From assembly GCF_036588685.1 (NCBI RefSeq), contig NC_086382.1, positions 75,206,001-75,270,000 of the forward strand: DNA of 64,000 nucleotides, read 5' to 3'. The position numbers and the translations under genes are program-made. This DNA comes from Mytilus trossulus (lineage: Eukaryota). The notes under the pieces are model-generated. The model saw only the letters and a program-made list of their open reading frames with translations. It searched no databases and was not told the origin of the DNA. This document shows, piece after piece, positions 15,597-63,984 of the stretch. How positions within the stretch are numbered: position 1 is the stretch's first letter; each line of letters begins with the position of its first letter.

Positions 15597-16600
15597 ATGG
15601 AAGAGACAAGGTATAGAAACAGTTTTGTTTCGTCTACACCTAAAGATCAGGGTGTTCGTCCGAAAGATACTTTTATAAAAAGAAATGATTCGGGTCTGGA
15701 ATCAAGAGAGTCCTTATTGTCAAGAAAAGGAGATAATGTAAAAGTTGATTTACCAACATTCAACAACCCGAATACGCACAAAACTGTTAAATTTTCCCAA
15801 ATTGATTTAAAGGAAGGGGACACTTTGCCTTTACCCATAGATAATAGTTACAATAGGGAAAAAGACAAAACTGACAAATTAAAGTACCGACATACTGGTT
15901 ACACAGATAATTCTGGTGTGAAAATTAAACCATGTCAATATAACGGTAGCACATCATGGACGGACTATTTGTCCCATTTTGAAATGTGTGCACTTGTAAA
16001 TAATTGGTCGGAAAACCAAAAAGGGTTATATTTGGCGGTATCGTTAATGGGACAGGCACAGGCTGTACTTGGAGATTTACCAAGTGAAAAAAAACAAAAC
16101 TTTTCCGATCTAGTCAGCGCACTTGAAGAGCGATTCGCGCCTTCTAGTCAAACTGAGTTATATAGAGTTCAGTTTAAAGAAAGACGTCAAAAAGCCAGCG
16201 AATCTCTTCCCGAATTAGGCCAATCAATTCGGAGATTGTCCAATTTGGCATATCCTACTGCCCCATTGGACGTACGTGAAACTCTCGGGAAAGAGCAGTT
16301 TATTGACGCGCTCGTTGATTCGGAAATGCGACTGAGAATAAAACAATCGCGACCGAAAGGCTGTGAGACTTGCCGTTGAACTAGAGGCTTACAATAAAGC
16401 CAAAAATAACGTGAGAGAGGGACGAGGTTATTTACGGCAAACTAATAACGACGACGAATTAAGTAGGGGAGAAAAGATTACAAATAGTGACTCGCCAAAC
16501 AAAGACATCTTACCCAAAGTAAGAGGACAAATAAGGGTTGTTACAATTGTGGCAAATTTGGTCATTTAGCAAGGGACTGTCGCCTACCCCGAAGAAATCA
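15597..16600 (+). pseudogene. gag: Gypsy gag, frameshifted
   Basis: YNGSTSWTDYLSHFE...KEQFIDAL capsid-like region. Zinc knuckle CYNCGKFGHLARDC lies in a shifted frame at ~16539-16580. Confidence 0.85.
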
Positions 16601-16646
16601 GAACAAATATAATGGAAATAAGGGGGATGGGTCTGTCAAAACAGTA

Positions 16647-19600: not shown

Positions 19601-20377
19601 CTCATTGGATACATTCAGATCAAGGCAGGCAATTTGAAAGCTTGTTGTTTCAAGAGATGTGTTGTATTCTAAACATTAAGAAAACACGTACCACCCCATA
19701 TCATCCGAAATCTGATGGTATGGTGGAAAGATTTAATAAGACTCTTGCAACAATGTTAATTTCATTTGTGGAACAGAACCAGAGAGACTGGGATGAATAC
19801 ATTCCTTTTGTTATGATGGCATATAGGGCATCCGAGCACGAAACTACTGGGCAAACGCCAAATAGTCTCATGTTAGGTAGGGAACTATCAACCCCTTTAG
19901 ACATCATGTATGAAATGCCACCATCCGTTAAAGATATCCCTTCACATAAATGGGCTTGGGAACTAAAAGAGAAGTTAGAACACTCCCACAGCATTGTCAG
20001 AGGTAAAATCAAAGGACAGATGCGAAGACAGAAACACTATCACGACCTCAAACTGTCATGTCAAAATTTCAGAAAAGTATGGTGACCTTACATACAAAGT
20101 TGACTGTGGATATCGAGGAAAATCACAAGTTATACATGTCGACAGACTAAAGAAAAAGAAGAAACAGACATTAAGGACAGAACCGGATAACAACACTTTT
20201 GTCCCATTGGACACTGAAAATGATATAGTTGAAAACGACCCTATAGAAACTCTTTATTCACAAGACATAGCTGTTCACGAGTCAATGTTGCCTGAGGAAG
20301 AAACGCAAGAAAGTAGTTATGAAGGGTGTCGTGCAAGGCGAAAACCAGCTTGGATGGCAGATTATATTGTCAAATAG
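16647..20377 (+). pseudogene. pol: Gypsy pol (protease, RT, RNase H, integrase) with stop and frameshifts
   Basis: VDTGA protease; RT with MPFGL and YNDD; RNase H TDAS; integrase HHCC, then SDQG and GMVER. Stop at 17741 and frameshift near 19550. Confidence 0.95.
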
Positions 20378-23246: not shown

Positions 23247-23297
23247 AAATGAATAGTAGGGATACATATGGAAAGCATGCATATATATATATATATA

Positions 23298-24253
23298 CGA
23301 GTCTAAATTGAAAACTACGTTCAAACCTATGACTGCGTTGGATAAAAACCGCAATTTTTATACGTGTGCATGTCAAACAAATTTCGTTGTAGAAGGGTCT
23401 AAAAACAGCACAAACAACATTTTCCAAAAGACCAAAAGCGTGAAAAAGTATATTTAAACAAAACGCATTTGACTAACAGGTCGAACAACTGATGTTCTTT
23501 AACCCTGCTGACTGCCATTGGCGATTGCCAAATAAAATTGATCACAAGATGTAACAAAATGGATCTTAATATAAATTTAATACGTCACAAAAAAAAAAGT
23601 TTGTTAACTTGTGGACAGGATGTTGTGCCACAAACATTCGGTGTCAATATTTCTTTAGTACACCATATCCGGATTTCGACAATAAATGTCTCTTCAGTGA
23701 TGTTAGGGATCGAAACGGTATTTGGAAGGCCATATAAAAAGTACCCTCATTTTTTAGAGAAAGTACCCTCATTTTTAGATTAACTCTTGAATTTTAAGAG
23801 TCAATATATAGGATGAATTGATCATATAAACCGGAGGGAAAATATGATACATGCCCAAACAAAAAATATAAACGAGTCTAAATTGAAAACTACGTTCAAA
23901 CCTATGACTGCGTTGGATAAAAACCGCAATTTTTATACGTGTGCATGTCAAACAAATTTCGTTGTAGAAGGGTCTAAAAACAGCACAAACAACATTTTCC
24001 AAAAGACCAAAAGCGTGAAAAAGTATATTTAAACAAAACGCATTTGACTAACAGGTCGAACAACTGATGTTCTTTAACCCTGCTGACTGCCATTGGCGAT
24101 TGCCAAATAAAATTGATCACAAGATGTAACAAAATGGATCTTAATATTAATTTAATACGTCACAGAAAAAATTTTTTGTTAACTTGTGGACAGGATGTTG
24201 TGCCACAAACATTCGGTGTCAATATTTCTTTAGTACACCATATCCGGATTTCG
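23298..24253 (-). mobile_element. Retrozyme-like tandem element, 575-bp unit x1.66, inserted in a (TA)n tract
   Basis: Direct repeat with period 575 (23297 vs 23872; 23665 vs 24240). Contains a hammerhead and abuts (AT)n at 23281-23297. A near-identical inverted copy lies at 60780-61636. Confidence 0.85.
23660..23703 (-). ncRNA. Minimal type I hammerhead ribozyme
   Basis: Minus strand ACAUCA-CUGAAGA-GACA-uuuau-UGUC-GAAA-U-CCGG-A-UA^UGGUGU. Full catalytic core, 6-bp stem I, 4-bp stem II, palindromic stem/loop III. Confidence 0.85.
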
Positions 24254-24377
24254 TATACACAACTCGTCTAAACATCAACCCAACAATGTTAGATCTGTAA
24301 ATTTGCTTTCGCAAATTTTTGGTTCTTCCCACGCTGGGATTCGAACCCATGCTACTGTGATATCGTGACACCAAATG
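24254..24377 (-). mobile_element. Partial tRNA-derived SINE
   Basis: B-box/T-arm GGGTTCGAATCCC on the minus strand (24348-24336) followed by a non-tRNA body ending GTTGTGTATA. No full cloverleaf. Confidence 0.6.
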
Positions 24378-25652: not shown

Positions 25653-27752
25653 TATAATCTACATCCAGCACGCCATATCTCTGGTATTTAAAGACTCGTA
25701 CACGTTCAGACTCTACTTTCACCACCATACCCGTATTATAAAAAAGACTAATACAGATTGTTATTTTCGGGGTCGTTTTAGTCTCTTGTTGTTGTCCAAC
25801 TGACAATTATACCAAATCCTCGTTTTAATATCTCTGATTTACATCAACCACCATACCCATAAAATAAAAAGGCAAATACAGATCTATAACGTATATTCCC
25901 CCATACCCGTGGAGTATATAGCCTGATACATATCTATAATATACATCCACCACCATAACCGTGGTATATAAACACTAATACCAGTCTATAACCTACATCC
26001 ACCACCATACCCGTGGTTGTATATAAAGACTAATACCAGTCTATAATCTACATCCACCACCATACCCGTGGTTTATTAAAACGTATACCGGTCTATAATC
26101 TACATCCACCACTATACCCGTGGTTTATAAAGACAAACACCGGTCTATTATCTACATCCACCACCATACCAGTGGTATATAAAGACTAGTAATACCGGTC
26201 TATAATCTACATCCACCACCATACCCGTGGTATATAAAGACTAATACCGGTCTATAATCTGCATCCACCACCATACCCGTGGTTTATGAAGACTAATACC
26301 GGTCTATAATCTACATCTACCACCATACCCGTGGTATATAAAGACTAATACCAGTCTATAATCTACATCCATCACCATACCCGTGGTATAAAAAGACTAA
26401 TACCGGTCTATAATCTACATCTACCACCATACCCGTGGTATATAAAGACTAATTCCGGTCTATAATCTACATCCACCACCATACCCGTGGTATAAAAAGA
26501 TTAATACCGGTCTATAATCTACATCCATCACCATTCCCGTGGTATATAAAGACTAATACCGGTCTATAATCTACATCCACCACCATACCCGTGGTATATA
26601 CAGACTAATACCGGTCTATAATCTACATCCACCACCATACCCGTGGTATATAATGACTAATACCGATCTATTATGTACATCCACCACCATACCCGTGGTA
26701 TAAAAAGACTAATACCGGTCTATAATCTACATCCATCACCATACCCGTGGTATATAAAGACTAATACCGGTCTATAACCTACATCCACCACCATACCCGT
26801 GGTTTATAAAGACAAATACCGGTCTATAATCTACATCCATCACCATACCCGTGGTATAAAAAGACTAATACAAGTCTATAATCTACATCCACCACCATAC
26901 CCGTGGTATATAAAGACTAATACCGTTCTATAATCTACATCCATCACCATACCCGTGGTATATAAAGACTAATACCGGTCTATAATCTACATCCACCACC
27001 ATACCAGTGGTATATAAAGACTAATACCGGTCTATAATCTACATCCACCACCATACCAGTGGTATATAAAGACTAATACCGGTCTATAATCTACATCCAC
27101 CACCATACCCGTGGTATATAAAGACTAATACCGGTCTATAATCTACATCCATCACCATACCCGTGGTATATAAAGACTAATACCGGTCTATAATCTACAT
27201 CCACCACCATACCAGTGGTATATAAAGACTAATACCGGTCTATAATCTACATCCACCACCATACCCATGGAATATAAAGACTAATACAAGTCTATAATCT
27301 GCATCCACCACCATACCAGTGGTTTATAAAGACAAATACCGGTCTATAATCTACATCTACCACCATACCCGTGGTATATAAAGACTAATACCAGTCTATA
27401 ATCTACATCCATCACCATACCCGTGGTATAAAAAGACTAATACCGGTCTATAATCCTCATCCACCACCATACCCGTGGTATATACAGACAAATTCCGGTC
27501 TATAATCTACATCAATCACCATACCCGTGGTATATAATGACTAATACCGGTCTATAATCTACATCCACCACCATACTCGTGGTATATAAAGACTAATACC
27601 GGTCTATAATTTACATTCACCACCATACCCGTGGTTTATAAAGACTAATATCGGTCTATAATGTACATTCACCACCATACCCGTTGATTATAAAGACTAA
27701 TACTGGTCTATAATCTACATTCACCACCATATCCGTGGTTTATAAAGACTAG
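25653..27752. repeat. 52-bp tandem satellite, block 1
   Basis: Unit TATAATCTACATCCACCACCATACCCGTGGTATATAAAGACTAATACCGGTC (26201, 26253, 26461...). About 35 regular units after 25930, with degenerate units at the left edge. Confidence 0.97.
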
Positions 27753-30484
27753 TGTTGGAAATCACGCATAGAATAGAACGTTTACGTTACGTGGCATTAT
27801 TCAATGTATATCCAACGTTGTGTACTTATGACGTTAATTTGTACTTTAGTCATCAATACAAATTCATACAGTTTAGACGTCTTTGTTATTGCATGCAGTT
27901 TTTAGTAAAATGATATTGGTACCGTGACCAGATGAAGATGACTACAAAGCTTAAATCTATTCGAGCGGGACACAGAAGCGCAGTTTCTAGGATGTTAAGA
28001 AGATTTGAGAAGAGAAGTGTAAAAGAAGAAAAACCGGAAGAGGACGAGCTGGAAACAATTTTGGATACATTAAAGGAAAAGCAAGATATTCTAAAGGATT
28101 TGGATAAGAACATTTTGGATAGTGTACAAGAGGAGGATATAGAGCAAGAGATACTTGACACAGATGAGTATAAATTTAATTTAGAGACGAAAATACGCAA
28201 AATTCGTAAACTTATTCACGTTAAAACATCAAATTTAAATGCAGCCGCTAGAAGTTTTTCGCCGCACAATGAGACACTACAACTCATTCAAAATGTTGAC
28301 CCCGTATATAACAGAAGAGATGACTCACAAAATACTGGCCACAATTTCACGTCTTTACGTTTAAATTCTAGCGTCAATAGCAGCAATTTTCATAAACTAC
28401 CGAAATTGAATTTACCTACGTTTGATGGAAACGTACTTGAATGGCAATCCTTTTGGGATTCTTTTGATTCCGCAATTCACACCAACAACACACTAACCGA
28501 AGTTCAAAAGTTCAACTACCTAAAATCTTTACTAGAAGGAGAAGCGACATATACCATAGACAGATTTGCTCTTACGCACACAAAGTACAACAAAGCTATT
28601 GAACTCATACATGAAAGATTCGGACAAAAGCATAAGATAATTCAATCGTACATGCAAGCACTACTAGACATACCCGCACCAAAGAATACGCCTTCACAAC
28701 TTAGAAGTTACTATGACAGAACAGAGAAATACATAAGAGAGCTTGCATCTCTTGGACAAGCCCAAGACTCGTACGGCTCGTTATTAGTACCAGTCATACT
28801 CAACAAAATGCCCAGTGAAATACGCAAAAACTTAAAACACGTGAGCAGGGTTCAACAGATTGGTATGTTGGTGATCTTAGGAGATCAATCTTTAAGGAGC
28901 TGGCCATTTTAGAGTCTGGTACAGAAACATTTGAAAGTCCTAGTACTACAGCTACCTTCTACACAAACACAAAATCTCGCGAAAACTGGCCAAAAACCAA
29001 TTCACCACAGAAATCTTATCAAATTAGCTGCGCATACTGCAAGGAACCCCACTTTTCGTCAGAATGTACTAAATATAAAGACCAGAATGACCGCATGAAA
29101 ATTGTTAAAGAAGATAGATTGTGCTTCAATTGCTTAGGGCGACACCGCGTAGTAGATTGCAAATCTATATCAAACTGCAAGAAATCTATATCAAACTGCA
29201 AGAAATATGATAGACGTCAACACACAAGCCTATGCAACAACGACCATGATAAAGAAACTACAAGTACAAGTAGTACAAGTACAATACACAAACACAACGC
29301 GGAGGAATCTGAGACTTCTGTTTTATATTCATCTTTAAATTGTGATCGCCCAAATGTTTTATTAAAGACAGCAATAGCACCAATAAGCTACAAAGACCAA
29401 ACGATTGATGCAAAGATCCTTTTTGACGAAGGCGCCACAAGGTCATTTATTACAAGACATTTAGCGGAGAAATTGGAGTTAAAAACCACAGGAAGTAAAG
29501 CAATCACGCTATCTAGATTTGGAGACGATAATGAGAGCAACTCTTTTGAACAGCTAAACAAAGCTACAGTGAAGATAAAAACTATATATGGCCAAGAAAT
29601 ACCAGTCGATGGTTTGATTGTACCTAAAATCGCCGCACCATTTAAGACAAACATTGAAACTGCAAAACAGTTATCATGTTTGCAAAACGTAAGCTTAGTT
29701 CACGCCGTTACGGTGGATACATCATTTGAAATTTGACTGCTTGTTGGAGCTGAACAATACTGGGATATTTTCGAGGATGATATCATTAGGGGCGAGGGAC
29801 CAACAGCAGTAAAGTCCAACTAGGAAACTTACTCTCGGGACACCTCAAAAGAACCAGTTCAAACAACGAAACACACTTTAGCACTACCAATGTAGGAGAA
29901 ACGGAAGAGACACACACTACCGAGGATACAACAGAGAGGAATACTATAAACATTGAACAAATTTCTACAATTATGGACACTTCAAGGACAAAACATAGAA
30001 CCAAGTAAATGAAACAGACAAACCAGCTTTAATGTGGACAAGAGACAGTAACAAAAACAAACGCTTTTACGAGGATTAACAAGGAATGGGAAAATCAAAA
30101 TCTCAGTTCAAAAAGCTTAACTTATAGCAGGAATTGGATTACAGGGAGAAACTTACAAGAAAAAAAAAGTATAATCTGACACTTCACTATAACAAACTGT
30201 GGTTAAAAGTTTTAATTTTAATGATGGACTTTAAAGTTTATTACATTTTATTATTCTAACGGAAAAACTTTAATTATTTTACAAGTTTTAAATTTTCACT
30301 TTTCGTGGGCCGGAGAATGTTGGAAATCACGCACAGAGGAGAACGTTAACGTAACGCGGCATTGTTGTATATCCAACGTTGTGTACTTATGACGCTATCT
30401 TGTACTTTAGTCATCAATACAAATTCATACAGTTTATAAGTCTTTGTTATTACATGCAGTTTTTAGTAAAACAACTTTACAATA
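27753..30484 (+). mobile_element. Short BEL/Pao LTR retrotransposon (gag-protease only)
   Basis: LTRs 27753-~27915 and 30318-30484 start TGTTGGAAATCACGCA. 5-bp TSD ACTAG (27748-27752, 30485-30489). tRNA-His-like PBS TGGTACCGTGACCAG (27917-27931). Purine tract 30307-30317. Confidence 0.9.
27932..29840 (+). pseudogene. gag: BEL/Pao gag plus aspartic protease, frameshifted
   Basis: KLPKLNLPTFDGNVLEWQSFWDSF (DUF1759-like); zinc knuckles CAYCKEPHFSSEC and CFNCLGRHRVVDC; protease ILFDEGATRSFI. No RT, RNase H or integrase follows. Confidence 0.85.
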
Positions 30485-30599
30485 ACTAGTAATACCGGTC
30501 TATAATCTACATCCACCACCATACCCGTAATATGTAAAGACTAATACCGGTATATAATCTACATCCACCACGTGCCATACCCGTGGATATAAAGACTAA

Positions 30600-31143
30600 T
30601 ACCTTCTTCACCTGCATATGGAATATACATTTCCCAACTTATTAGGTATCAAGAGCTTGCAGCTCCTATTCGGACTTTGTAAAACGTCACCACTGTCTGA
30701 GCAGAAAGTTGATGAACCAGGGGTATGTCAAAGAACGTCTCATCCTTCTTCTAAAAAAAGTTCACCGGACGATACCCAGAACTTGTTGATAAATATTCCG
30801 TATCAACTTTACAAATAATACAAGATGGTCTTGAAGTATAGATTTTGCGTACTGACGTCGGGTTATCATCTTAATAACGTGTTATAGTATTCTTTTATTT
30901 GTCTTTATTAATATTACTTGTACTGTTAAGTCAGTTTTTTTTATATATATTCTTTTGGAGTGCCCCTGTGGTTTTGTAAAACATCATACTTTGAACGACA
31001 AAATTATTTCATTTACTATTATTACTTTTACGTATTATCTTGAATACTATGAATGACAAAACTATTTTATTCATAAATCCTACATTTTTTGTAAAGTCTG
31101 TTTTTTATGATATACATTTGACGTGAAACTGTACTTATGTATG
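30600..31143 (+). mobile_element. Duplicated 5'-truncated Penelope-like RT C-terminal fragment
   Basis: Copy of 32061-32603 at offset about 1462, including the same satellite junction. Confidence 0.7.
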
Positions 31144-31266
31144 TTTAATTTCATGTTGTTTCTAAATATGTATTTTAATTTATGTTTTGTCTATTATCCA
31201 TTTTGTTTGTAATTCATATGCCTATAAGGGCCCTTTGATTAGGAAAAAAACATATTTGATTTTGAT

Positions 31267-32065
31267 TATAAAGACTAATACCGGTCTATTATCTACATCC
31301 ACCACCATACCCGTGGTATATAAAGAGGAATACCGGTCTATAATCTACATCCACCACCATACCCGTGGTTTATAAAGACTAATACCGGTCTATTATCTAC
31401 ATCTTCCACCATACCCGTGGTATATAAAGACTAATACCGGTCTATAATCTAAATCCACCCACATACCCGTGGTTTATAAAGACTAATACCGGTCTATAAT
31501 CTACATCCACCGCCATACCCGTGGTTTATAAAGACTAATACCGGTCTATAATCTAAATCCACCCACATACCCGTGGTTTATAAAGACTAATACCGGTCTA
31601 TAATCTACATCCACCACCATACCCGTGGTTTATAAAGACTAATACCGGTCTATTATCTACATCAACCACCATACCCGTGGTTTATAAAGACTAATACCGG
31701 TCTATAATCTAAATCCACCACCATACCCGTGGTTTATAAAGACTAATACCGGTCTATAATCTACAGCCGCCACCATACCCGTGGTATATAAAGAATTATT
31801 CCGGTCTATAATCTACATCCACCACCATACCCGTGGTATATAAAGGATAATACCGGTCTATAATCTACATCTACCACCATACCCGTGGTTTATGAAGACT
31901 AATACCGGTCTATAATCTACATCCACCACCATAACCGTGGTTTATAAAGACTTATTCCGGTCTATAATCTACATCCACCACCATACCCGTAATATGTAAA
32001 GACTAATACCGGTATATAATCTACATCCACCACGTGCCATACCCGTGGATATAAAGACTAATACC
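31267..32065. repeat. 52-bp satellite, middle block
   Basis: Same unit, about 15 copies. A further ~2 units lie at 30486-30603. Confidence 0.95.
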
Positions 32066-32786
32066 TTCTTCACCTGCATATGGAATATACATTTCCCAAC
32101 TTATTAGGTATTCAAGAGCATGCAGCTCCTATTCAGACTTTGTAAAACGTCACCACTGTCTGAGCAGAAAGTTGATGAACCAGGGGTATGTCAAAGAACG
32201 TCTCATCCTTTTTCTAAAAAAAGTTCACCGGACGATACCCAGAACTTGTTGATAAATATTCCGTATCAACTTTACAAATAATACAAGATGGTCTTGAAGT
32301 ATAGATTTTGCGTACTGACGTCGGGTTATCATATTAATAACGTGTTATAGTATTCTTTTATTTGTCTTTATTAATATTACTTGTACTGTTAAGTCAGTTT
32401 TTCATATATATTCTTTTTGGAGTGCCTCTGTGGTTGTGTAAAACATCATACTTTGAACGACAAAATTATTTCATTTACTATTATTACTTTTACGTATTAT
32501 CTTGAATACTATGAATGACAAAACTATTTTATTCATCAATCCTACATTTTCTGTTAAGTCTGTTTTTTATGATATACATTCGACGTGAAACTGTACTTAT
32601 GTATCCCGTCATACTTTGAACCAAACAACTATTTTATTTATTATTATTACTTTTACTGTAAAATCTGTTTTGTTATATCTACTTTAAGTGACTATACATG
32701 TACGTAGACGTCATACTTTGAACGACAAAATTACTTTTATGTCTATTTATGATATTTATCTATGATATTTATTTACACCTGTACAG
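32061..32786 (+). mobile_element. 5'-truncated Penelope-like retroelement fragment (RT C-terminus plus 3' region), left part
   Basis: Translates IPSSPAYGIYISQLIRYSRACSSYSDFVKRHHCLSRKLMNQGY...KK-(fs)-FTGRYPELVDKY...DGLEV*. It joins the satellite at shared ATACC. Confidence 0.65.
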
Positions 32787-39357: not shown

Positions 39358-42300
39358 AACAAACATGATTTACTTCTGCAAGCCTTTGTTCATGAAATGA
39401 ATTTTCAATCTTATCGATCAGAGAAATCAACTTTTTTTCATCATTCTGGATTGTCAACCTCTCAAATTAATTATATCTTGCACAATGCCACAAATGCTTT
39501 TCTTTAGGACTATAAGATCCATGACCAATGTCATTTCAATACATCAAGCCACATTGCCGTGAGTGCAAAAATGAATGTCAAATCAAAACCACTGAATAAA
39601 GCAATCAAATCAGGCTATATCAGTAAATTCAAACTGCAGTGGAAAGATATAGATAATGAAACATATCATAATCATATCAGTAATGAACTCTCTCAGCATA
39701 ATATTGAAAATCACTCAATAGAAGAAATCATGAACTTTCTATGCAACTGTCTCAAAAAAGCTGCTACAGCTGCTGTACCATCAAAGATCATCAAATTAAA
39801 AGGTCCACATTTCAAAGCATCTCCAACCACTCTTATGCTGCTCAAAACTAGTAAAGAAAAATATCAACTCTGGAAATCTCATGGCAAGAAAAATGATCAT
39901 CTTAAAACAGACAAAATTCTGGCTCAACGAAATCTTCGCAAACAATTCCGAAAGGAACAGTATATGTATAGAACCCAATTCTACAATGAACTAATAGACA
40001 ATCCTAGCAATGATATGTTTCATTATCTCATTCGTCGCAACAGAGGCTCCAAAAATAAAGATGCGATCTGTATAATAGAAAATGGTGAGCACCACTACTC
40101 TGCAAAGGACCAAACAAATAGCTTCTCTAGATACTTTGAGGACTTAGCTGTTCCGAAAGACAACGGTTATGATCCAGAATTTTTAGATCTCTGCAATATC
40201 CGGCATAACATATTTGATGAACTCTGCAAACAAAACAGCGACGAACCACAATTTAGTGCTCAAAATATCTGTGATGCAATCAAACAGCTACATTCTGGCA
40301 AGGCAACAGATGAACTAGGTCTTGCTGCTGAGCATTTTAAAAACTCACCAACAACAGTTACTCATTTTCTTACTAACTGTTTCAATAACATTTTCATCAA
40401 TCATCATATACCTGATATCTTTAAATCTGGTATCGTAACACATGTGCTCAAAAAAGGGAAAAATCCATTATTAATGGACAACTATAGAGGAATTGCCGTT
40501 ACACCTGTCATCTCAAAACTCTTCGAATGTACCATACTACCTCGCTTAACCTTGAATTTTGATCAGTCATCTCTACAGTTCGGCTTCACAAAAGGGTTGT
40601 CGATGGTTATGGCCAGTCGCATTATCACTGAAGCTAGGGCAGAAGTAAAATTAGTCACAATGGAACCTTTATTTCTTATTACTGTGGACAGCCAAAAGGC
40701 CTTCGACGTCGCAGATCACATCATATTATTATATGTGTTATATGACCATACTCAGAATCATTCTCTCTGGTCAATAGTGAAAATGTTTTACTCAGGGCTA
40801 GTTTCAAGAGTCAAATGGAAGAGAAATGTTAGTAACAGCTTTAATATTCATCAGGGAGTCCGACAAGGAGGCATTCTTTCACCTTTTCTATATAAAGTCT
40901 ATGTAAACAATCTGCTTGAGGATCTTAAATCGCACAGTCTTGGTCTTAAAATTGGCACAAATTATGTTGGCTGCCCAACTTGTGCGGACGACATATCCTT
41001 CTTGAGCAATAATCATCAGGAATTACAATGCATGCTCTCTGTTGCAACTCATCATGCCAGACAGTCAAGAGTAACAATAAATCCTACAAAAACTAAAGCT
41101 GTCATCCTCAACAAACCGAAAAAGATAAGCAAGTCCGATTTAAACTGGACCCTAGGCAACACCCTTGTTTATCCATCGGAAGACACAACACATCTTGGCT
41201 TAATAAGAGCAGAATTGAAGGAAAACAATCTAAATATTGATGCACGCATCAGCATTGCCAGACGTACTCTTTACTCTCTAATGAATACTGGTTTACATGG
41301 AACAAATGGACTAAACCCACAGACATCTTACAAGATATATCAGAGCTATGTTATTCCCCGATTGCTATATGGAATGGAAATACTCCCTCTTAACCAATGC
41401 CAACTTGGTATTTTGGCACGCTTTCACACAAAAACATTGCGAAATATTCACTCTCTACCTACACGAACAGCCACTGGATTAGTATTTATGCTGTTGGGAG
41501 CGCTAACAATTGAGGCAGAAATACATAAAAGGCAACTATCATTTCTATACAGTGTTCTCTCATGTAACAATTCAACAATCCAAGGTTTAGTTGACAGACA
41601 AGTCATTATGAATATTGATAACAATCTCAGCTTCTTCTGTAAGGTCACAGGTGTACTAACTGTATACGATCTGCCAAGTATATCTACACTTAGTCAAAAT
41701 TTACCGTCAAAATTAAAATGGAAAGCAACAGTTAAAATAGCAATTCAGGATTATTGGACTAAAACTCTCATTAAAGAAATAGAAACAAAGTCCTCATTAA
41801 CATACTTGGACAAAACCATGTTAAGAATTGGGCATACACATCCGGTTTGGACAAGTCTTTCCTCAACTGTATCAGATGTTAAAAAGGGAGCGATAAAAGT
41901 TCGTCTATTAACTGGGACTTATATTCTTGAATCTCACAGATCTAAATTTAGTGGTGGCAAGGAATCGGCATTATGTAAATGCTGTGGAACATCAGATGAA
42001 GATATAATTCATTTCCTTCTATTGTGTCCGGCTCTACACAAGCAGAGAAAAGAAACATTTAGCAAACTCAAGTCTTATGTGATCTCAGTCATTGGCACGA
42101 AATATTGGTCTGAGAATTTTAAAGGACATTTGGATCTGATAAAACTTATTGTTGACAGCTCTTTTCTGCTGCCAATGCTTAGAAATTGGACTGAACTGGA
42201 CAAAATTCATCGATTGGCTACGGACATGTGTTATAGACTCCATGCTCAGCGTATATGGAAATTACAAGGAAAATAATATCTCTATACTCAAAGATAAATA

Positions 42301-42822: not shown

Positions 42823-43592
42823 TCTATAATCTACATCCACCACCATACCAGTGGCTTATAAAGACTAATACCGGTCTATAATCTACATCCACCACCATAC
42901 CCGTGGCTTATAAAGACTAATACCGGTCTATAATCTACGTCCACCACCAAACCCGTGGTTTAGAAATACTAATACCGGTCTATTATCTACATCCACCACC
43001 ATACCCGTGGATTATTAAGTTTAATACCGGTCTATAATCTACGTCCGTCATCATACCCGTGGCTTATAAAGACTAATACCGGTCTATAATCTACATCCAC
43101 CACCATACCCGTGGTTTATAAAGACTAATACCGGTATATAATCTACATCCACCACCATACCCTTGGTTTATAAAGACTAATACCGGTCTATTATCTACAT
43201 CCACCACCATACCCGTGGCTTATAATGACTACTACCGGTCTATAATCTACGTCCACCACCATACCCGTGGTTTATAAAGACTAATACCGGTCTATAATCT
43301 ACATCCACCACCATATCCATGGCTTATAAAGACTAATACCGGTATATAATCTACATCCACCACCATGCCCGTGGTATTTAAGGACTAATACCGGTCTATT
43401 ATCTACATCCACCACCATACCCGTTGTTTATTAAGACTAATACCGGTCTATTATCTACATCCACCACCATACCCGTGGTATATAAAGACTAATACCGGTC
43501 TATAATCTACATCCATCACCATACCCGTGGTGTATAAAGACAAATACCGGCCTTTTATCTACATCCACCACCATACCCATGGTATATAAAGA
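42823..43592. repeat. 52-bp satellite, last block
   Basis: Same unit, about 15 copies. Confidence 0.95.
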
Positions 43593-44217
43593 CATCGGGT
43601 TGGTTGTGAAATTTCTTTTACACGAACGATTTATAACTAGTAGCAGCACTTTTTGAAAAATATGAAATGTGGCCTTTCTATCAATACCAGTATGTAGTGG
43701 GTTGGTATAGCTCTTGCACCTGCATTTTTTAATTACTTTAATGTGTAGATGTACATTGTAATACAACTATTGATTTTCCCCTTCAAGTCTTTGTTAAATT
43801 TGCACTTTTCAAAAAATTGTGCAGAATTGTCTTTGTTTCAAAAGTAAGAAGTACTTGACATGAGTAAAGTTTTATCCTGTCCAGTTCTATAGAAAAATGT
43901 TCTCATAACATTTCATTGCATATAAGAAAAAAAACATCATTGGAAGTAAACCAATCAAAATTCTCCCCTTATTCTATCTGTGCACAAGGTTTAATCACCA
44001 TGTAACCTCAAGATTACAAAATTTTCTATAGAAATCACAAATAAAAATACTGGTGTTTTGAAATACCCAAGACATATGATTATGATACAGAAATAGTTTT
44101 ACTGCAATAAAATGTAGGATTAATTACCTACAACGGTAAAATGCAAGGGAATATATTTTTCGAATTACTTTTGTAAACAACAGGATGTGACATACTATGA
44201 TTTGGTGGTATTACACC

Positions 44218-45359: not shown

Positions 45360-45806
45360 ATGTACCCGGTTTGATGAGAAACATAAGTGTAAAATAAAAT
45401 ACATGTGTCGCTTTTATAAGGATGAATATATGAACCACTTTTAACTTCTTTCATACTGACGATAGTATATAATCCTAACAATGTCGTAGTCATTTATAAT
45501 TAAAGTATCTCATAATAGAACCATTACAATGCTATAAAACATACACACAGTAGCTTTAAGTGTGCCATAAACGTCGGAAATTGTCCCCCAAAGATAGAAA
45601 CACAATGACTTTAATCGTATCATTTGTGCACCTGAATGAATTCAGTGAAGGCATGTTGTTGTAATAAATTGAAATGTTACATCGGCAAAGATTATTTCTT
45701 TTGTATGTTTGGAACTAAATAACAAATTATTACTTGTGAGAAATGTCGTAGATTATAGCTCTCCGTTTTTTATATAAGGTTTGGTTTTTACATATTTTGG
45801 CCACGA

Positions 45807-45850
45807 GCATTACTGAAGAGACATGAATTGTCGAAATGCGCATCTGGTGC
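45807..45850 (+). ncRNA. Minimal type I hammerhead ribozyme
   Basis: GCAUUA-CUGAAGA-GACA-ugaau-UGUC-GAAA-U-GCGC-A-UC^UGGUGC; predicted cleavage after 45844. Confidence 0.85.
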
Positions 45851-46082
45851 AGAAAAATTGTTACAGTTAATGTTATTACTACCACGGGTCGATGCCTCTG
45901 GTGGACTTTTAAATTTGCTGTTACAAAATGTTACACATTATTATAAATTAAATAATGTATCTCCCTCATGCAAAGCTCTGATTCCTTTCACAGATTTGGC
46001 TATCCTTTTTGAACCTTTTGGATTATAGCTCTTCATCATTTGTATAAGCTTTGGTTTTTACATCTTTTGGCCACGAGCTCGA

Positions 46083-46126
46083 GCATCACTGAAGAGACAT
46101 GGATTGTCGAAATGCGCATCTGGTGC
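46083..46126 (+). ncRNA. Minimal type I hammerhead ribozyme
   Basis: GCAUCA-CUGAAGA-GACA-uggau-UGUC-GAAA-U-GCGC-A-UC^UGGUGC; predicted cleavage after 46120. Confidence 0.88.
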
Positions 46127-47457
46127 AGAAAAATTGTTACAGTTAATGTTATTATAAGGATTGTTTTACAGTATGCGGTACAGGCTTTACTAATTGTCGA
46201 AAGCCGTACGGTGACTTATAGTTGTTAATTTCTGTGTCATTTTGGTTTCTCGTGGAGAGTTGTCTTAATTGCAATCATACTACATCTTCTTTTTAAAATA
46301 TAAATGTACTGTTTTCGATTTTAAATGGACGACTATTTATCTTTTAATTTTATACTTTAGGAAAAGAGCTGCATAACATTGTTGAGCTATCGTATATGTA
46401 GTATGTATTCGTATTTATAATGAAATACAAAACAAAACGTGTATGATAAACGGATAAACAAAATATCGAGAAATTAAGGATGAATAAATGCAAGTACAAG
46501 AAGAAACTCACCTTTTTATCAATACATTTAAATAATTTAATGAATAAACACTTGTTTTTAAAACGGTTTGTTTCTATTTACATAGATATAGGAAGATGTG
46601 GTGTGAGTGCCAATGATACAACTCTCCATCCAAATAACAATTTGTAAGAGTAAACCATTATAAGTCAAGCTAGGGCCTTCATCACGGATCCTTGGCTCAC
46701 ACTGAACAACAAGCTATAAAGGGCCCCAAAATTACTAGTGCAAAACCATTCAAACGGGTCAACCAACGGTCTTATATTTCCAATATGGAATTTACGTTCG
46801 TTTTTCTACCGAGAATAGCAAAACCTCATGAAATATATCGTTGGAGTTTATAAACTAAATTTAATCCTCACCTGTGCCATGATTGGCCATTTCCGGTTTT
46901 TTTTCTAAAAAAAAAGAAGCGTGGTTGGTTACATGTTATGAATTTACTTACAATTCGGGATTTTTCTTCTTCAAGTAAACGGAATCAGAAAAAAAATCAC
47001 TATTCTATGTCGAATACCTTAAACTTGGCAAAGGATATAAAAGTTTTGCAGTAAAGTACGGTTTCATTTTTCAAGTACAACGTTATTTTAAAGAGTCCAT
47101 TGAGTAAAAGGTAAGGCAGGATAAGAAAATTGGGGGATTCAATGAAAAAAATAATTGTGAATTGATTTTTTTTTATCCTACATTGAACTTTTGATGTCGT
47201 CCTTTGATCTAGAGAAGACATTTAAATTGAATATTTAGATATTAAAAATGTTAAGATTTTTAACTTTAAACTTTACTACCAATTGCATAAAATTATAAAA
47301 CCAATGAATTTCAAATGCACAATTTATAAAAGCTAGAATTGTTATTGGAATCATTTATGCGAATTCACAATGGTAGCTTGAAACGACCTTGACCAGCTAC
47401 GTGAATATTAATCAGTCCATTCAACGTTATAGTACGTGTGTTCTATTTTCTATTTTC

Positions 47458-59513: not shown

Positions 59514-60779
59514 GTATGTACAAGTTTCTTCGTAGATTCAAATCAAATATGTCAAGCCTTGCACGTCATTTATAATAAAATATGTTTTCTTTACTACTAA
59601 TTCTACGCAAAGTTGGTTTCTCAAGTATGATATTTTACTTTGTTCATGATTATAACCAAACATGACAAAATGAGCATTTTTTCTGTTGAAATACGTATAA
59701 CTTTCTGTTATTAGCGTGGCATTTAAAGATTCAAATAAGTGTTTTCATCAGTCAGTGTTTATCATGTTAAACATTTAAAACAAAATTGTTTCTGATTTTT
59801 AAAATACAACAGCGTGTTTTTCTGAAACGTTTTCTTTTTAACTTCAACTGAACCTCTTCGAGCATTGTCACGATTATGGTTTATGTTGTAAGTATATATA
59901 ACATTTGTACGTTTTGGAAAAAATATTAACTAGTAAAAATGCGACTTGTCTTGACAAAATATTTGCTACTTCAAATGACAATATTTAAACTCTAATTTGT
60001 CTAGATTACACTGATAGTATCATCAATAATATTTTACGAATAGAAACTACATAGTAACAGAATAATGAGATCATAATACATTAAAGGACACCAATTGCTT
60101 CTGTCAAACATGTCAAACACGAATAAAACTCCGCGTCTATCTTCATAAGATATCGCACTTCACATTCAAATCAGCTTAAATAATTGGTATTCATATATAT
60201 AAACAGAGGGCTTTTAAGTAGGTAGGGAATTTTGAAACTATTAAAGCGAATACGAAAAAGATTATGATAAGTGAAATTTGGTTTTAAACAGTAATTGTAT
60301 GCTTAACTTCATGCTAAAAGCCTGAAAACGGAAAATGTGAAATCTTATTATGAGCGTAAGTTATTATTCTTATTTTTGTTTGTTTGGAACTCAATACACA
60401 TTGATATAGGTCAATCATTATGCCTGCTGTCAAAACAAATATGTTAAGTAAATTTGTATACGACGTGCAATTCAGTCTCATGTTAATGTGTATAGGAAAA
60501 CAAATAATACAAAAACTGAACAAATGTTATTTGTATTCAACATAAATGGGTGAATTAGTTTTCTGTTGAGTAACAAGAACACTACTAGAACTGGGAATGG
60601 TATGGACACTTATGCATAGAAATGTTCTGATAGAGGAAAATCATATACATAAGTTTGGGCACATTTATTCCGAGTACTAAGAACGGTTTTATGATTGTTT
60701 CTTGTACTTTCTGCGGCAAGCATTACCATGCAGTGATGTGACGATAAATATGGAATCGTATATATATATATATATATAT

Positions 60780-61636
60780 TTAAATTTATATTAGGATCCA
60801 TTTTGTTACATCTTGTGATTAATTTTATTTGGCAATCGCCAATGGCAGTCAGCAGGGTTAAAGAAAATCAGTTGTTCGACCTGTTAGTCAAATGCGTTTT
60901 GTTTAAATATACTTTTTCACTCTTTTGGTCTTTTGGAAAATGTTGTTTGTGCTGTTTTTAGACCCTTCTACAACGAAATTTGTTTGACATGCACACGTAT
61001 AAAAACTGCGGTTTTTATCCAACGCAGTCATAGGTTTGAACGTAGTTTTCAATTTAGACTCGTTTATATTTTTTGTTTGGGCATGTATCATATTTTCCCT
61101 CCGGTTTATATGATCCGTTCATCCTATATATTGACTTTTAAAATTCAAGAGTTAATCTAAAAATGAGGGCACTTTCTCTAAAAATGAGGGTACTTTTTAT
61201 ATGGCCTTCCAAATACCGTTTCGATCCCTAACATCACTGAAGAGACATTTATTGTCGAAATCCGGATATGGTGTACTAAAGAAATATTGACACCGAATGT
61301 TTGTGGCACAACATCCTGTCCACAAGTTAACAATTTTTTTTTCTGTGACGTATTAAATTTATATTAGGATCCATTTTGTTACATCTTGTGATCAATTTTA
61401 TTTGGCAATCGCCAATGGCAGTCAGCAGGGTTAAAGAACATCAGTTGTTCGACCTGTTAGTCAAATGCGTTTTGTTTAAATATACTTTTTCACTCTTTTG
61501 GTCTTTTGGAAAATGTTTTTTTGTGCTGTTTTTATACCCTTCTACAACGAAATTTGTTTGACATGCACACGTATAAAAACTGCGGTTTTTATCCAACGCA
61601 GTCAAAGGTTTGAACGTAGTTTTCAATTTAGACTCG
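60780..61636 (+). mobile_element. Retrozyme-like tandem element, ~573-bp unit x1.5, flanked by (TA)n on both sides
   Basis: Period 573 (60781 vs 61354). (TA)n at 60759-60779 and from 61637. Same family as 23298-24253. Confidence 0.85.
61231..61274 (+). ncRNA. Minimal type I hammerhead ribozyme
   Basis: ACAUCA-CUGAAGA-GACA-uuuau-UGUC-GAAA-U-CCGG-A-UA^UGGUGU; predicted cleavage after 61268. Confidence 0.88.
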
Positions 61637-61689
61637 TATATATATATTTATATATATTGATCTTAATTTCATCCATCTTTATTATGTTC

Positions 61690-63984
61690 TGACGAGCGGA
61701 ACTTCAGTCAAAGATGTTTGAGACTGTGCAAGATCCAATTTTAACTTTTAATACAGTTCTAACGTCAATTGCTGACAGAACTATTCCTAAGACCTCGGCA
61801 AATCCAAAACATCCCAGTAAACCATGGTTTGATGACGCATGTGATCAAGCCATAGGTGACCGTAAAAAATCTGAAAACGGTTCAATCAACAACCAACGAC
61901 GGAAAACTTGAGTAATTTCCGTATTTTTCGCGCTAAGGCACGGCGGACTTGTAGGCAAGCCCGACGAACATCCTGGAAAAAAATTGTCTCGGGTATTACA
62001 TCTCGCACTCCGATGACAAAAGTTTGGAATATGGTAAATAAAATAAAAGGTAAAAATTCTAAAGACACTGTAAAACATTTGAAAGACGGCAATAATTTAT
62101 TAACATCTGAAAAGGATATTGCCAACAAACTTGGTGAAACTTTTGCAAAGTCTTCTTCTTGTAACAACTACAGGGAAGACTTTAAAAAAGTTAAAAAAAA
62201 AACAAAAAGAAAAAATTAAATTAAACTTTAAATAAAAAAATGGTGAAAATTATAATAAACTATTTTCTCTTGAAGAACTTAAAACATCTCTGTCAAAAGC
62301 CCATGATACAGCTTGTGGGCCTGATAATATTCACTACCAACTCTTAAAAAACTTGCCAGATTCCTCGCTAGAAGCTCTCTTGCAGCTCATGAATAACATC
62401 TGGGAATCTGGTGATTTACCATCAATCTGGAAGCTTGCAACCGTCGTGCCTATTCCAAAACCAAGTAAAGATCATACGGATCCTATTAATTATCGACCAA
62501 TTGCTCTTACCAGTTGTGTCTGTAAAACACTCGAACGGATGGTCAATGATCGCCTTGTTTGGTTCATGGAATCCAATGGGCTATTAGCCAATATCCAGTG
62601 TGGATTCCGACAGGGTCGCAGTACTCTTGATCATCTTGTTCGATTCGAATCATTTGTCCGTAATGGTTTTGCGAAAAATGAGCATGTGGTGTCGGTCTTT
62701 TTCGACCTTGAGAAGGCCTATGATACTGCATGGAAATATGGTATTTTAAAAGATCTATTTGATATGGGGTTGAAAGGCAATATGCCTAATTTTATTTCTA
62801 ATTTTCTCTCTAACAGACAATTTAATGTTAGAGTTAATTCAACCATGTCTGATCTTTATGATCTTTATAAGCTTGGACTTCAATATGCTGTCAAACTAAA
62901 AGCGCATTCAGATAATCCTGCCTACAGCTGTGTTTTTAATCCGATTTATGAAGATATTTTTGCAAAACATGAAAATAAAATTCCTCCGTTAGGTTTACGT
63001 TTAAAACCACATTTAGCTTCTTTTGATTTAAAATCTGTTGCTCAAGTTCAAACTTGCAAATTTCCTCCATGGGAACTTCCCAAACCAAAAATGATATTTG
63101 ATCTCCGTGAACACAATAAAAATAAAACAAATCCTCTTTTAATTCAGCAACACTATGCTGAAATTAAAGCCGATTATCTCGATTTTTCAACTGTCTATAC
63201 TGATGGATCAAAAGATGGTGATAGAGTTGCATCTGCTGCTGTCTTCAGGGACAGAGCTGCAACCCTCCGTTTGCCATCTGATGCATCCATCTTTACTGCT
63301 GAAGCAGAAGCAATAATTTTGGCTTTGAAATTTATTGCTTCTTCAGATAAATCCAAATTTATTATATGTTCGGATTCACTTTCATGCTTACAAGCTATAC
63401 GAAATACTAAAATTAAAAACCCAACAATCCTGAAAATTTTATATGTAATGAGGAATTTAAAAATTCTTCTGAAAGAAATAATATTTCTATGGGTTCCGAG
63501 TCATGTTGGAATCCTTCGAAACACAGCTGTAGACCTTGAGGCAAAGAATGCCCTTGGTGACCCTCTATCTAACTGTGATATACCATATACTGATTTTAAA
63601 TCTAATATTAGAGAATATGTTTTTAATATATTGAAAAATAAATGGAGTAAAAAAGACGATAATAAATTGCATGAAATTAAACCTAATTTAGGCAAACCTT
63701 TTGATAATATTATGTGCAGAAAAGATCAGTGTGTTATTACTAGATGTCGTATTGGTCATACTAGAATAACACACGAGTATCTTTTAAAAAATGAAGATGA
63801 ACCACAATGTGTTCCTTGCAACTGCAAGTATACTATTAAACATGTTTTAATTAATTGTATTGACTTTGCTGATATTCGTAAGAAGCATTTCAAGGTCAAT
63901 AATATGTATGATTTATTTAATAATGTTCCATTTACAAATATTGTTGCTTTTTTAAAAGAAATTGGAATTTATTATGAAATATAA
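61690..63984 (+). pseudogene. 5'-truncated I/Nimb-like LINE ORF2 (partial RT, RNase H, zinc finger) with RT core deleted
   Basis: PWF, YRPIALTS, QCGFR and DLEKAYD are present, but QG and YxDD are missing. RNase H motifs YTDGSK, AEAEAI, SDSLS, WVPSHVG. C-terminal CVPC...HVLINC. Confidence 0.9.

What the first reader, a model, noticed from the sequence alone, without database searches (positions are those of the whole stretch)
60759..61657. A ~575-nt hammerhead retrozyme family that appears to target (TA)n microsatellites with a fixed 3' end
Seen: two near-identical copies (23298-24253 minus, 60780-61636 plus) of a non-coding 573-575-bp unit, present as 1.66 and 1.5 tandem units. Each has a complete minimal hammerhead. 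Both end at exactly ...CAATTTAGACTCG followed by (TA)n, about 370 nt after the cleavage site, while the 5' ends differ. Inside the unit the same position continues TTTATATT (~61063), a partial mimic of the target. Established: minimal type I hammerheads with palindromic loop 3 characterise Penelope-like elements and animal non-LTR retrozymes, which give circular RNAs. Inference: a circular RNA is reverse-transcribed more than once around, primed from a nicked (TA)n tract at one defined site, by an RT supplied in trans. I cannot tell whether this family or its targeting has been described.
Basis: partly seen in the sequence, partly recalled or inferred. Interest (0 to 1): 0.85.

Follow-up and report, generated by a model that had tools for sequence, protein, structure and literature searches.

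The report
Hammerhead retroelement inserted into TA repeats
A young, abundant, non-coding mobile element of a probably mussel-like genome, made of 574-base tandem units that each carry a hammerhead ribozyme motif, always ends at one fixed internal point and sits in TA-repeat tracts; the kind (animal retrozymes tied to Penelope-like elements) is known, and this precise footprint is the useful part.

Summary
Both window copies are 1.49 and 1.67 tandem units of a 574-nt, 34% GC unit with no reverse transcriptase frame. Each has one complete type I hammerhead. Each ends at ...TTTAGACTCG, 368 nt past the cleavage site, joined to (TA)n.

Genome-wide, the 21-nt end occurs 5151 times. Of these, 2700 continue into the next unit and about 1600 run straight into TA repeats.

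In a sample chosen by position, 43 of 48 insertions have (TA)3 or more at the 3' junction (2% by chance), and 31 of 48 have it at the 5' flank. The 5' ends vary. Lengths run smoothly from 0.05 to 9.4 units.

Best reading: a non-autonomous dependant of Penelope-like elements (a non-LTR retrozyme). It is copied by target-primed reverse transcription that starts at an internal UA-rich docking site and integrates into nicked (TA)n. A Penelope-like family with a C-terminal endonuclease in the same genome ends ...TTAGACACTT|(AT)n and is the candidate helper.

A circular-RNA, rolling-circle template fits the data but is not shown. Multimeric transcripts and later array growth also occur.

The scan had noted this family before on other DNA of this genome (s1-820520).

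The parts
60759..60779 (.). (TA)10 tract on the 5' flank of copy B
   Evidence: It is one of only three TA tracts of 16 bp or more in the 64-kb window, and all three touch ends of this family.
60780..61636 (+). Copy B: 1.49 units (unit positions 291-574, then the full unit 61063-61636)
61229..61276 (+). Type I hammerhead of copy B. Predicted cut between 61268 and 61269. Helix III is AU/UA with the palindromic loop CCGG.
   Evidence: 79.5 bits with the model built here; 98.4% of cells paired, three pairs with compensatory changes; 2147 exact copies.
61057..61070 (+). Internal unit junction GACTCG|TTTATATT: the reverse-transcription start point followed by the UA-rich primer-docking stretch
   Evidence: The two junction classes G|TATATA and GTTTATAT|ATA fit two annealing registers on this stretch.
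61580..61601 (+). Hairpin CTGCG...CGCAG lying 35 nt before the 3' end. The 5'-end hot spot (unit positions 538-544, window 61600-61606) lies at its 3' edge.
   Evidence: 6 of 48 5' ends fall in 7 nt. Reading this as a pause site is inference.
61624..61636 (+). Fixed 3' terminus ...CAATTTAGACTCG of copy B
61637..61663 (.). TA-repeat tract at the 3' junction of copy B
23298..24253 (-). Copy A: 1.67 units. The 5' end is inside a hammerhead (unit position 194). The 3' end is ...TTTAGACTCG at 23298.
23658..23705 (-). The complete hammerhead of copy A (cut between 23666 and 23665)
23282..23297 (.). (TA)8 at the 3' junction of copy A
24254..24376 (-). 5' flank of copy A: a 124-nt 5'-truncated copy of the 441-nt tRNA-like tandem family, ending ...GTTTAGACGAGTTG plus a degenerate TA (tgtatac). 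Copy A landed in that element's TA tail.

Best explanation
This is a non-coding, non-autonomous retroelement of the animal (non-LTR) retrozyme kind. It depends on the reverse transcriptase and GIY-YIG endonuclease of a Penelope-like element (PLE).

Shown by sequence:
- Copies share one 3' terminus (...TTTAGACTCG, sometimes running 4-7 nt further into TTTATAT).
- They have variable 5' ends and lengths from 31 nt to more than 9 units.
- They sit in (TA)n, usually with TA repeats on both sides.
- Independent copies hit the same tract, tail to tail.

Inferred mechanism:
- The endonuclease nicks a (TA)n tract.
- The freed 3' end anneals to the UA-rich stretch UUUAUAU just downstream of ...UUAGACUCG in the RNA.
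- cDNA synthesis starts there, 368 nt downstream of the hammerhead cut. This is internal initiation, as shown in vitro for a Poseidon PLE.
- Synthesis runs until it falls off, with roughly a 50% chance per unit.
- Copies longer than one unit need a template without an end at the unit boundary. That is either a monomeric circular RNA made by dimeric hammerhead cleavage plus ligation (favoured, about 0.45), or multimeric transcripts of source arrays (about 0.4).
- Some long arrays grew further after insertion.

The likeliest helper is a PLE lineage with a C-terminal endonuclease and a Cys-rich linker upstream of GIY-YIG. Its own copies end ...TTAGACACTT|(AT)n.

Both window copies carry a single complete hammerhead, so neither should release unit-length RNA. 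They are probably inert offspring.
For: - Counts of the 21-nt end: 5151 in total, 2700 internal, 834 followed by TATATA, 799 followed by TTTATATATA, reversed controls 0.
- Sample chosen by position (all sites on contig 1, 0.9-29.5 Mb): 49 of 60 blast-defined pieces end at the unit end. Of 48 clean insertions, 43 have (TA)3 or more within 14 nt at the 3' side and 31 at the 5' side. Random 14-nt windows give 2.2%.
- Lengths run 0.05-9.4 units with a survival of 0.4-0.56 per added unit and no break at 1 or 2 units.
- Units within an array are 99.5% alike, against 95.9% between arrays. Arrays carry 2-18 fixed non-consensus columns. Five of the nine arrays with 4 or more units differ only or almost only by singletons.
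- Tail-to-tail partners sharing one TA tract are only 82-96% alike, so they are independent hits on the same tract.
- Hammerhead: variation falls at N7, at H17 (A or C) and in loop 2. The palindromic loop 3 changes as a pair (UCCGGA, UCUAGA, UGCGCA). A helix I pair switches between AU and GC.
- PLE context: 615 GIY-YIG candidates in the genome. The L080 fragment 2500-3508 is flanked by TA tracts on both sides and ends ...TTAGACACTT. The same end occurs in L073.
- Relatives of that fragment are proteins with RVT_1 plus a C-terminal GIY-YIG.
- Literature: retrozymes proposed as PLE dependants (PMC7229834; bioRxiv 10.64898/2026.07.22.740005). (TA)n preference is reported for Naiad PLEs, and the CX2-5CxxC linker is hypothesised to give Neptune PLEs a microsatellite bias (PMC8557442). 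Internal initiation and multimeric templates (PMC11167929).
Against: - No sequence homology was found between the unit and any autonomous PLE I could read: L081, and the fragments in L080 and L082. The helper is inferred from a shared short end motif and a shared target only.
- Arrays in L036 and at contig 7:11577133 show alternating or block variants, which a monomer circle cannot give.
- The unit-length RNA is not unusually structured (z = -1.6).
- Rfam finds no hammerhead here even at E up to 10, so the ribozyme call rests on the motif and covariation, not on an assay.
- In the one PLE studied in vitro, initiation was at a site not homologous to the target (PMC11167929). The docking by homology proposed here differs from that.
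Confidence: 0.8

Rival explanations
1. Same PLE-type retrotransposition, but the template is a linear multimeric transcript of a source array (no circular RNA). Long arrays owe part of their length to unequal crossing-over after insertion.
For: PMC11167929 concluded that unprocessed multi-copy RNA is the dominant substrate in vitro and found no reads ending at the hammerhead site. Arrays in L036 and at contig 7:11577133 have alternating or block variants. Contig 1:46466266-46473770 shows a roughly 1741-nt higher-order spacing.
Against: Between-array differences are largely fixed within arrays, and most arrays are star-like. That calls for a frequent single-unit bottleneck. A monomer template gives this directly. 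A multimer template gives it only with extra homogenisation.
Confidence: 0.4
2. A satellite DNA that spreads by recombination or segmental duplication. The TA repeats would be microsatellites born from the unit's own TA-rich end rather than a target.
For: Long homogeneous arrays exist. One pair of arrays 54 kb apart on contig 5 has identical structure and flanks, which points to a segmental duplication. The 3' TA tracts are longer than the 5' ones (median 15.5 against 6 nt).
Against: About 2400 dispersed loci are inferred on many contigs. Half of the sampled copies are shorter than one unit, with a fixed 3' end and a ragged 5' end. TA repeats also lie on the 5' flank in 65% of copies. Different copies and other families share single TA tracts.
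Confidence: 0.04
3. A SINE-like dependant of a LINE (non-PLE) whose reverse transcriptase makes or recognises (TA)n tails.
For: The window and loci hold several LINE-type reverse transcriptases. 5' truncation and a fixed 3' end are also LINE/SINE hallmarks.
Against: TA repeats occur on both flanks rather than as a tail only. Tandem and inverted tail-to-tail arrangements and a hammerhead are PLE hallmarks (PMC8557442, PMC4209133). No LINE ending in this motif was seen. EN+ PLE copies with the same kind of junction were seen.
Confidence: 0.06
4. A non-autonomous Helitron or Helentron carrying satellite-like repeats. These are rolling-circle DNA transposons that insert at AT or TT and are common in bivalves.
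For: Insertion in A/T dinucleotide context, a hairpin near the 3' end, and tandem internal repeats.
Against: Helitrons have a fixed 5' end and a CTRR 3' end. Here the 5' end is ragged at every unit position and the end is CTCG. The units carry a conserved, covarying hammerhead.
Confidence: 0.02

Closest known systems
Metazoan non-LTR retrozymes (Cervera and de la Pena 2020, PMC7229834), including the 350-390-nt Mytilus galloprovincialis families
   Same: Non-coding, low-GC tandem units, each with a type I hammerhead that has a short helix III and a palindromic loop. Thousands of copies. Proposed dependence on PLEs.
   Different: The unit is 574 nt, above the 150-450 nt range given there. The hammerhead strings and end motifs were not found in that paper's one supplementary file held as text, nor in the searchable library. 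That paper reports no microsatellite target (the word is absent) and no fixed internal 3' end. Circular RNA was shown there and not here.
Endonuclease-bearing Penelope-like elements with microsatellite bias: Naiad reported, Neptune hypothesised (Craig et al. 2021, PMC8557442)
   Same: (TA)n as the preferred target, partial tandem and inverted arrangements, 5' truncation, and hammerheads in the canonical clades.
   Different: This element encodes nothing. Naiads lack canonical hammerheads, and the Naiad copies next to these arrays (L047, L056) sit at non-TA sites with another 3' end. No shared sequence with a PLE terminal repeat was found.
[quoted passage not shown] 2024, PMC11167929)
   Same: cDNA starts at defined sites inside the RNA, downstream of the hammerhead. 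The target is AT-rich. Tandem copies follow.
   Different: The start here is 368 nt past the cut, against about 85-92 nt in PAc. It sits next to a target-like UA stretch, whereas the PAc start site is not homologous to the target. Here there are two registers 4-7 nt apart. In PAc the two start sites are separated by the 30-40-nt tail sequence.
Bivalve tRNA-derived SINEs with LINE partners (PMC11481361)
   Same: The neighbouring 441-nt family has a tRNA-like box B segment and forms direct and palindromic arrays.
   Different: That paper links its SINEs to LINE tails and never mentions PLEs. The 441-nt family here ends ...TTTAGACGAGTTG|(TA)n like the hammerhead family.

Membership tests
Non-LTR retrozyme (PMC7229834) | A type I hammerhead in the repeated unit | tested here: met
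   Core CUGANGA...GAAA, with 6-bp, 4-bp and 2-bp helices. 98.4% of cells are paired and three pairs show compensatory changes. There are 2147 exact copies. Rfam itself gives no hit.
Non-LTR retrozyme (PMC7229834) | Short non-coding tandem repeats (about 150-450 bp) of low GC | tested here: inconclusive
   The units are tandem, 33.6% GC, and the longest open stretch is 84 aa. But the unit is 574 nt, outside the published size range.
Non-LTR retrozyme (PMC7229834) | Expressed as unit-length circular RNA after self-cleavage | not testable with these tools
Non-LTR retrozyme (PMC7229834) | Dispersed copies bearing retrotransposition marks | tested here: met
   Fixed 3' end, ragged 5' ends, and about 2400 termini inferred from the counts. 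Target-site duplications cannot be read inside TA repeats.
Non-autonomous derivative of a Penelope-like element | Sequence homology to the terminal repeat or UTR of an autonomous PLE | tested here: inconclusive
   No similarity to the three PLE sequences I could read. Only the short TTAGAC end motif is shared. More PLE copies could not be fetched.
Non-autonomous derivative of a Penelope-like element | PLE-style insertion architecture: partial tandems, inverted tail-to-tail copies, 5' truncation | tested here: met
Non-autonomous derivative of a Penelope-like element | Same target as co-resident endonuclease-bearing PLEs | tested here: met
   The PLE fragment in L080 lies between two TA tracts. 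Those in L073 and L082 abut a TA tract at the 3' end. (TA)n preference is published for Naiad and a microsatellite bias is suggested for Neptune.
Non-autonomous derivative of a Penelope-like element | The 30-40-bp 'tail' extension at one end of insertions | tested here: inconclusive
   There is an excess of copies carrying an extra 31-37 nt (5' ends at unit positions 538-544, 6 of 48). Whether this equals the PLE tail is unclear.
Helitron / Helentron non-autonomous element | Fixed 5' terminus and a CTRR-type 3' terminus | tested here: not met
   5' ends fall at all unit positions and the 3' end is CTCG.

The most novel reading that the evidence does not exclude
A short terminal signature marks the internal start signal of one (TA)n-targeting Penelope-like lineage with a C-terminal endonuclease. 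The signature is YAGAC, then 2-7 nt, then a UA-rich stretch that pairs with the nicked (TA)n target. That lineage would mobilise several unrelated non-coding families through it: the 574-nt hammerhead family, a 441-nt tRNA-like tandem family with more than 7000 exact ends, and smaller ones. Penelope-like elements would then have a whole guild of SINE-like dependants recognisable by motif. Each transposition of the hammerhead family would pass through a single-unit circular RNA.
Probability: 0.3. Interest if true: 0.7.

Novelty: new member of a known kind. Interest (0 to 1): 0.5.

Why it matters
Dependence of animal retrozymes on Penelope-like elements has rested mainly on co-occurrence and on similarity to PLE terminal repeats. 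This family supplies thousands of young copies with a base-precise start point, a readable docking stretch and a strict target. The helper, the start signal and the circle-versus-multimer question all become testable, by in vitro target-primed reverse transcription and by RNA sequencing. It also explains why long TA tracts in this genome are crowded with nested and tail-to-tail repeats. That matters for repeat annotation and assembly of such genomes.

Tried and rejected
- Rfam, at gathering thresholds and at E up to 10, found no hammerhead. A model built here recovers all copies and a sister family.
- Folding of the unit-length RNA gave z = -1.6, so there is no rod-like structure to report.
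- I tested whether tail-to-tail pairs come from one event that primes both strands. Rejected: the partners are only 82-96% alike.
- The intact 1056-aa Naiad family as helper: no shared end, no TTAGAC terminus, no TA tract in the piece read. Related Naiad fragments lie inside retrozyme units at non-TA sites.
- A family-level 4-mer tally of TA-abutting ends did not put AGAC on top, because most clusters are 5' truncation points. The motif claim rests on the few recurrent true 3' ends only. Two of them (the 441-nt end and the ...CTCAGACGTACTTA end) belong to one composite unit, so they are not independent.
- ARAGORN calls no tRNA in the 441-nt family.
- Searching papers and one supplementary file for the sequence strings gave no hit.

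Full report
WHAT IS THERE. Window 60780-61636 (+) and 23298-24253 (-) are 857 and 956 nt of one repeat with a 574-nt unit (reference unit 61063-61636). The two align almost base for base.

Copy B is unit positions 291-574 plus one full unit. Copy A starts at unit position 194, inside a hammerhead, and runs 1.67 units. Both end ...CAATTTAGACTCG and are followed at once by TA repeats. At the internal unit junction the same G is followed by TTTATATT.

The unit is 33.6% GC, the same as the window. A trimer has no open stretch longer than 84 aa.

THE HAMMERHEAD. It lies at 61229-61276 and 23658-23705. It has the CUGANGA and GAAA cores, a 6-bp helix I, a 4-bp helix II, and a 2-bp helix III capped by the palindrome CCGG. 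The predicted cut is after AUA, 368 nt before the 3' end.

PMC4209133 describes exactly this layout as the canonical metazoan type I hammerhead, thought to act as a dimer. It is not the helix-III-less 'min-HHR' of Penelope-like elements.

Rfam does not see it.

Across 18 distinct variants, 98.4% of pair cells are standard pairs. Changes fall at the permissive N7 and H17 positions and in loop 2. The self-complementary six bases of helix III and its loop change on both sides at once (UCCGGA, UCUAGA, and UGCGCA in a sister family at window 45805-45852 and 46081-46128). One helix I pair switches between AU and GC. The variants were collected with a pattern that required the cores, so core conservation is not evidence; the pair changes are.

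The exact 42-nt motif occurs 2147 times in the genome.

THE FAMILY. The genome is 1.30 Gb, and the window is contig 10:75206001-75270000. A unit search saturates, with 793 candidates of which 37 were scored, many 98-99% identical to the window unit.

Exact counts of the 21-nt end, all with reversed controls of 0:
- total: 5151
- followed by the internal continuation TTTATATT: 2700
- followed by TATATA: 834
- followed by TTTATATATA: 799, a few of which are internal in a 553-nt subfamily

So there are roughly 2400 termini, and at least two thirds join perfect TA repeats.

UNBIASED SAMPLE. I fetched every site of the 21-mer on contig 1 between 0.9 and 29.5 Mb (49 loci) and delimited copies by blast.
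- Of 60 pieces, 49 end at the unit end. The rest are copies broken by later insertions.
- Junctions read G|TTTATATA... (21), G|TATATA (14), G|TGTATA (4) and G|TTTAYATA (2). Most of the other eight are degenerate TA.
- Of 48 clean insertions, 43 have (TA)3 or more within 14 nt of the 3' end, 31 within 12 nt of the 5' end, and 30 have both. Random 14-nt windows give 2.2%.
- In the 64-kb window, the only three TA tracts of 16 bp or more are the three that touch this family.

THE START SITE. The two main junction classes are what two annealing registers on the RNA stretch UUUAUAU would give. In the first, a primer ending in TA repeats pairs from position +4, and the cDNA then includes TTT. In the second, it pairs from +1 with one mismatch, and the cDNA starts at G. 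This reading is inference.

The 5' ends fall all over the unit. There is no peak at the hammerhead cut (unit position 207, window 61269). There is a hot spot at positions 538-544 (6 of 48), just 3' of the hairpin CTGCG...CGCAG. That may be a pause site or the PLE 'tail'.

TEMPLATE. Lengths run 0.05-9.4 units (median 0.98). The fraction surviving each further unit is 0.4-0.56 over the first three units (small counts beyond), with no break at 1 or 2 units. The template therefore has no end at the unit boundary.

Units within an array are 99.46% alike, against 95.9% between arrays. Arrays carry 2-18 columns that are fixed within the array but differ from the family majority. In five of the nine arrays with four or more units, the internal differences are only or almost only singletons. 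Together these call for a frequent single-unit bottleneck. A monomeric circular RNA read round and round supplies that directly.

Against a pure circle model, the L036 array has alternating variants, the contig 7:11577133 array mixes 551- and 572-nt units in blocks, and contig 1:46466266-46473770 has a roughly 1741-nt higher-order spacing. So multimer templates or later unequal exchange also act.

Only 12 of 48 sampled insertions have two or more intact hammerheads. Neither window copy does, so both are probably inert.

TARGETING RATHER THAN TAIL. Three tail-to-tail pairs in the sample share one 22-28-bp TA tract. The partners are only 82-96% alike, so they are separate events.

Many flanks are the TA-adjacent ends of other repeats. 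The 5' flank of copy A is a 124-nt copy of a 441-nt tRNA-like tandem family that ends ...GTTTAGACGAGTTG plus TA.

HELPER. Pfam GIY-YIG finds 615 candidates in the genome, among them many 1056-aa open frames.
- L081 holds one of these. The endonuclease is N-terminal, which is the Naiad layout. It shows no similarity to the unit.
- Naiad fragments related to it sit inside retrozyme units at non-TA sites.
- L080 2500-3508 is a 5'-truncated PLE with a C-terminal GIY-YIG and a Cys-rich stretch upstream of it. It lies between two TA tracts and ends ...CATTCTTAGACACTT|(AT)n. A short-helix-III hammerhead-like motif lies about 70 nt upstream, with C in place of U4 in both copies read (L080 and L073). 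The same end recurs in L073.
- Its relatives in public data are proteins with RVT_1 plus a C-terminal GIY-YIG.
- A second class in L082 has a CX4CxxC linker and abuts (TA)10 at its 3' end only.

Thus TTAGAC followed by 2-6 nt and then TA repeats closes the hammerhead family, the 441-nt family (7165 exact ends) and at least one autonomous-type PLE. The pattern occurs 9202 times, against 1241 for the reversed control, though the two big families dominate that count. I take this as a lead to the helper, not as proof.

LITERATURE.
- Retrozymes as PLE dependants: PMC7229834 and bioRxiv 10.64898/2026.07.22.740005. Neither reports microsatellite targeting.
- (TA)n preference for Naiads, and a linker-mediated microsatellite bias hypothesised for Neptune: PMC8557442.
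- Internal initiation, an AT-rich target and multimeric templates: PMC11167929.
- No paper in the searchable library combines retrozymes with microsatellite targeting or holds these sequence strings.
- The library lacks most subscription journals, and Repbase and Dfam could not be searched.

EARLIER NOTES OF THIS SCAN. s1-820520 describes a 566-nt variant of what appears to be the same family, in (TA)n with a fixed internal 3' end. s1-827350 describes a tRNA-like head beside antisense hammerhead repeats bracketed by (TA)n. I reached the same points independently on this window and on my own sample.

LIMITS. 

VERDICT. This is a real, young, very abundant member of a known kind. Its added value is a base-precise start site and strict (TA)n integration. 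The circular-RNA step remains inference.

Noticed in passing
window 24254-24376 (-); L082:3357-4440; L080:3535-4075: A 441-nt tandem-unit family with a tRNA-like box B segment (GGTTCGAATCC; ARAGORN calls no tRNA). It ends ...GTTTAGACGAGTTG followed by TA repeats. There are 7165 exact ends in the genome, with long direct arrays and inverted array pairs at exactly 441-nt spacing. The unit is composite and also holds the ...CTCAGACGTACTTA end often seen beside TA tracts. It may be a second PLE dependant.
   Followed up: partly
window 45805-45852 and 46081-46128 (+); L056:1076-1123 (-): A sister hammerhead family with nearly the same helices I and II but the palindromic loop UGCGCA, spaced 276 nt apart in the window. 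It is embedded in a different repeat.
   Followed up: partly
L080:2500-3508; L073:228-660: 5'-truncated Penelope-like copies (C-terminal GIY-YIG, Cys-rich linker) ending ...TTAGACACTT next to TA repeats. A short-helix-III hammerhead-like motif lies about 70 nt upstream, and its core reads CCGAUGA (C at U4) in both copies.
   Followed up: partly
L081:2544-5711 (contig 10:30946043-30949210) and more than 15 other places listed: A Naiad-type Penelope-like element (N-terminal GIY-YIG) with an intact 1056-aa frame in many copies, in tandem at 4277-nt spacing. It looks currently or recently active. Diverged fragments lie in the window at 30572-30835 and 32034-32298.
   Followed up: partly
L047:1711-2747; L056:1454-3744: Naiad-related fragments (about 60% identical to the 1056-aa family) inserted inside retrozyme units at non-TA positions. 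L047 shows a 5-bp overlap of unit positions (494-498) that looks like a target duplication.
   Followed up: no
window 25840-27751, 31266-32065, 42823-43593: Three arrays of one 52-nt minisatellite (15-37 copies, about 90% matches).
   Followed up: no
window 15597-20085, 27932-28912, 39559-42276, 62353-63984: Other retroelements: a Gypsy-type gag-protease-RT-RNase H-integrase element, a DUF1759 (Bel/Pao-type gag) frame, a 905-aa LINE-like reverse transcriptase, and an RT plus RNase H frame just downstream of copy B.
   Followed up: partly
contig 5:76912794-76916941 and 76966954-76971100 (L012/L013 and L006/L010): Two 2.1-unit arrays 54 kb apart with the same 5' point, the same flanks and the same TA tract. 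This is a segmental duplication rather than two insertions.
   Followed up: no
L038:3603-5084: A 1.48-kb element with terminal inverted repeats (GGCCGTGTTCA...TGAACACGGCC) inserted into a retrozyme unit.
   Followed up: no
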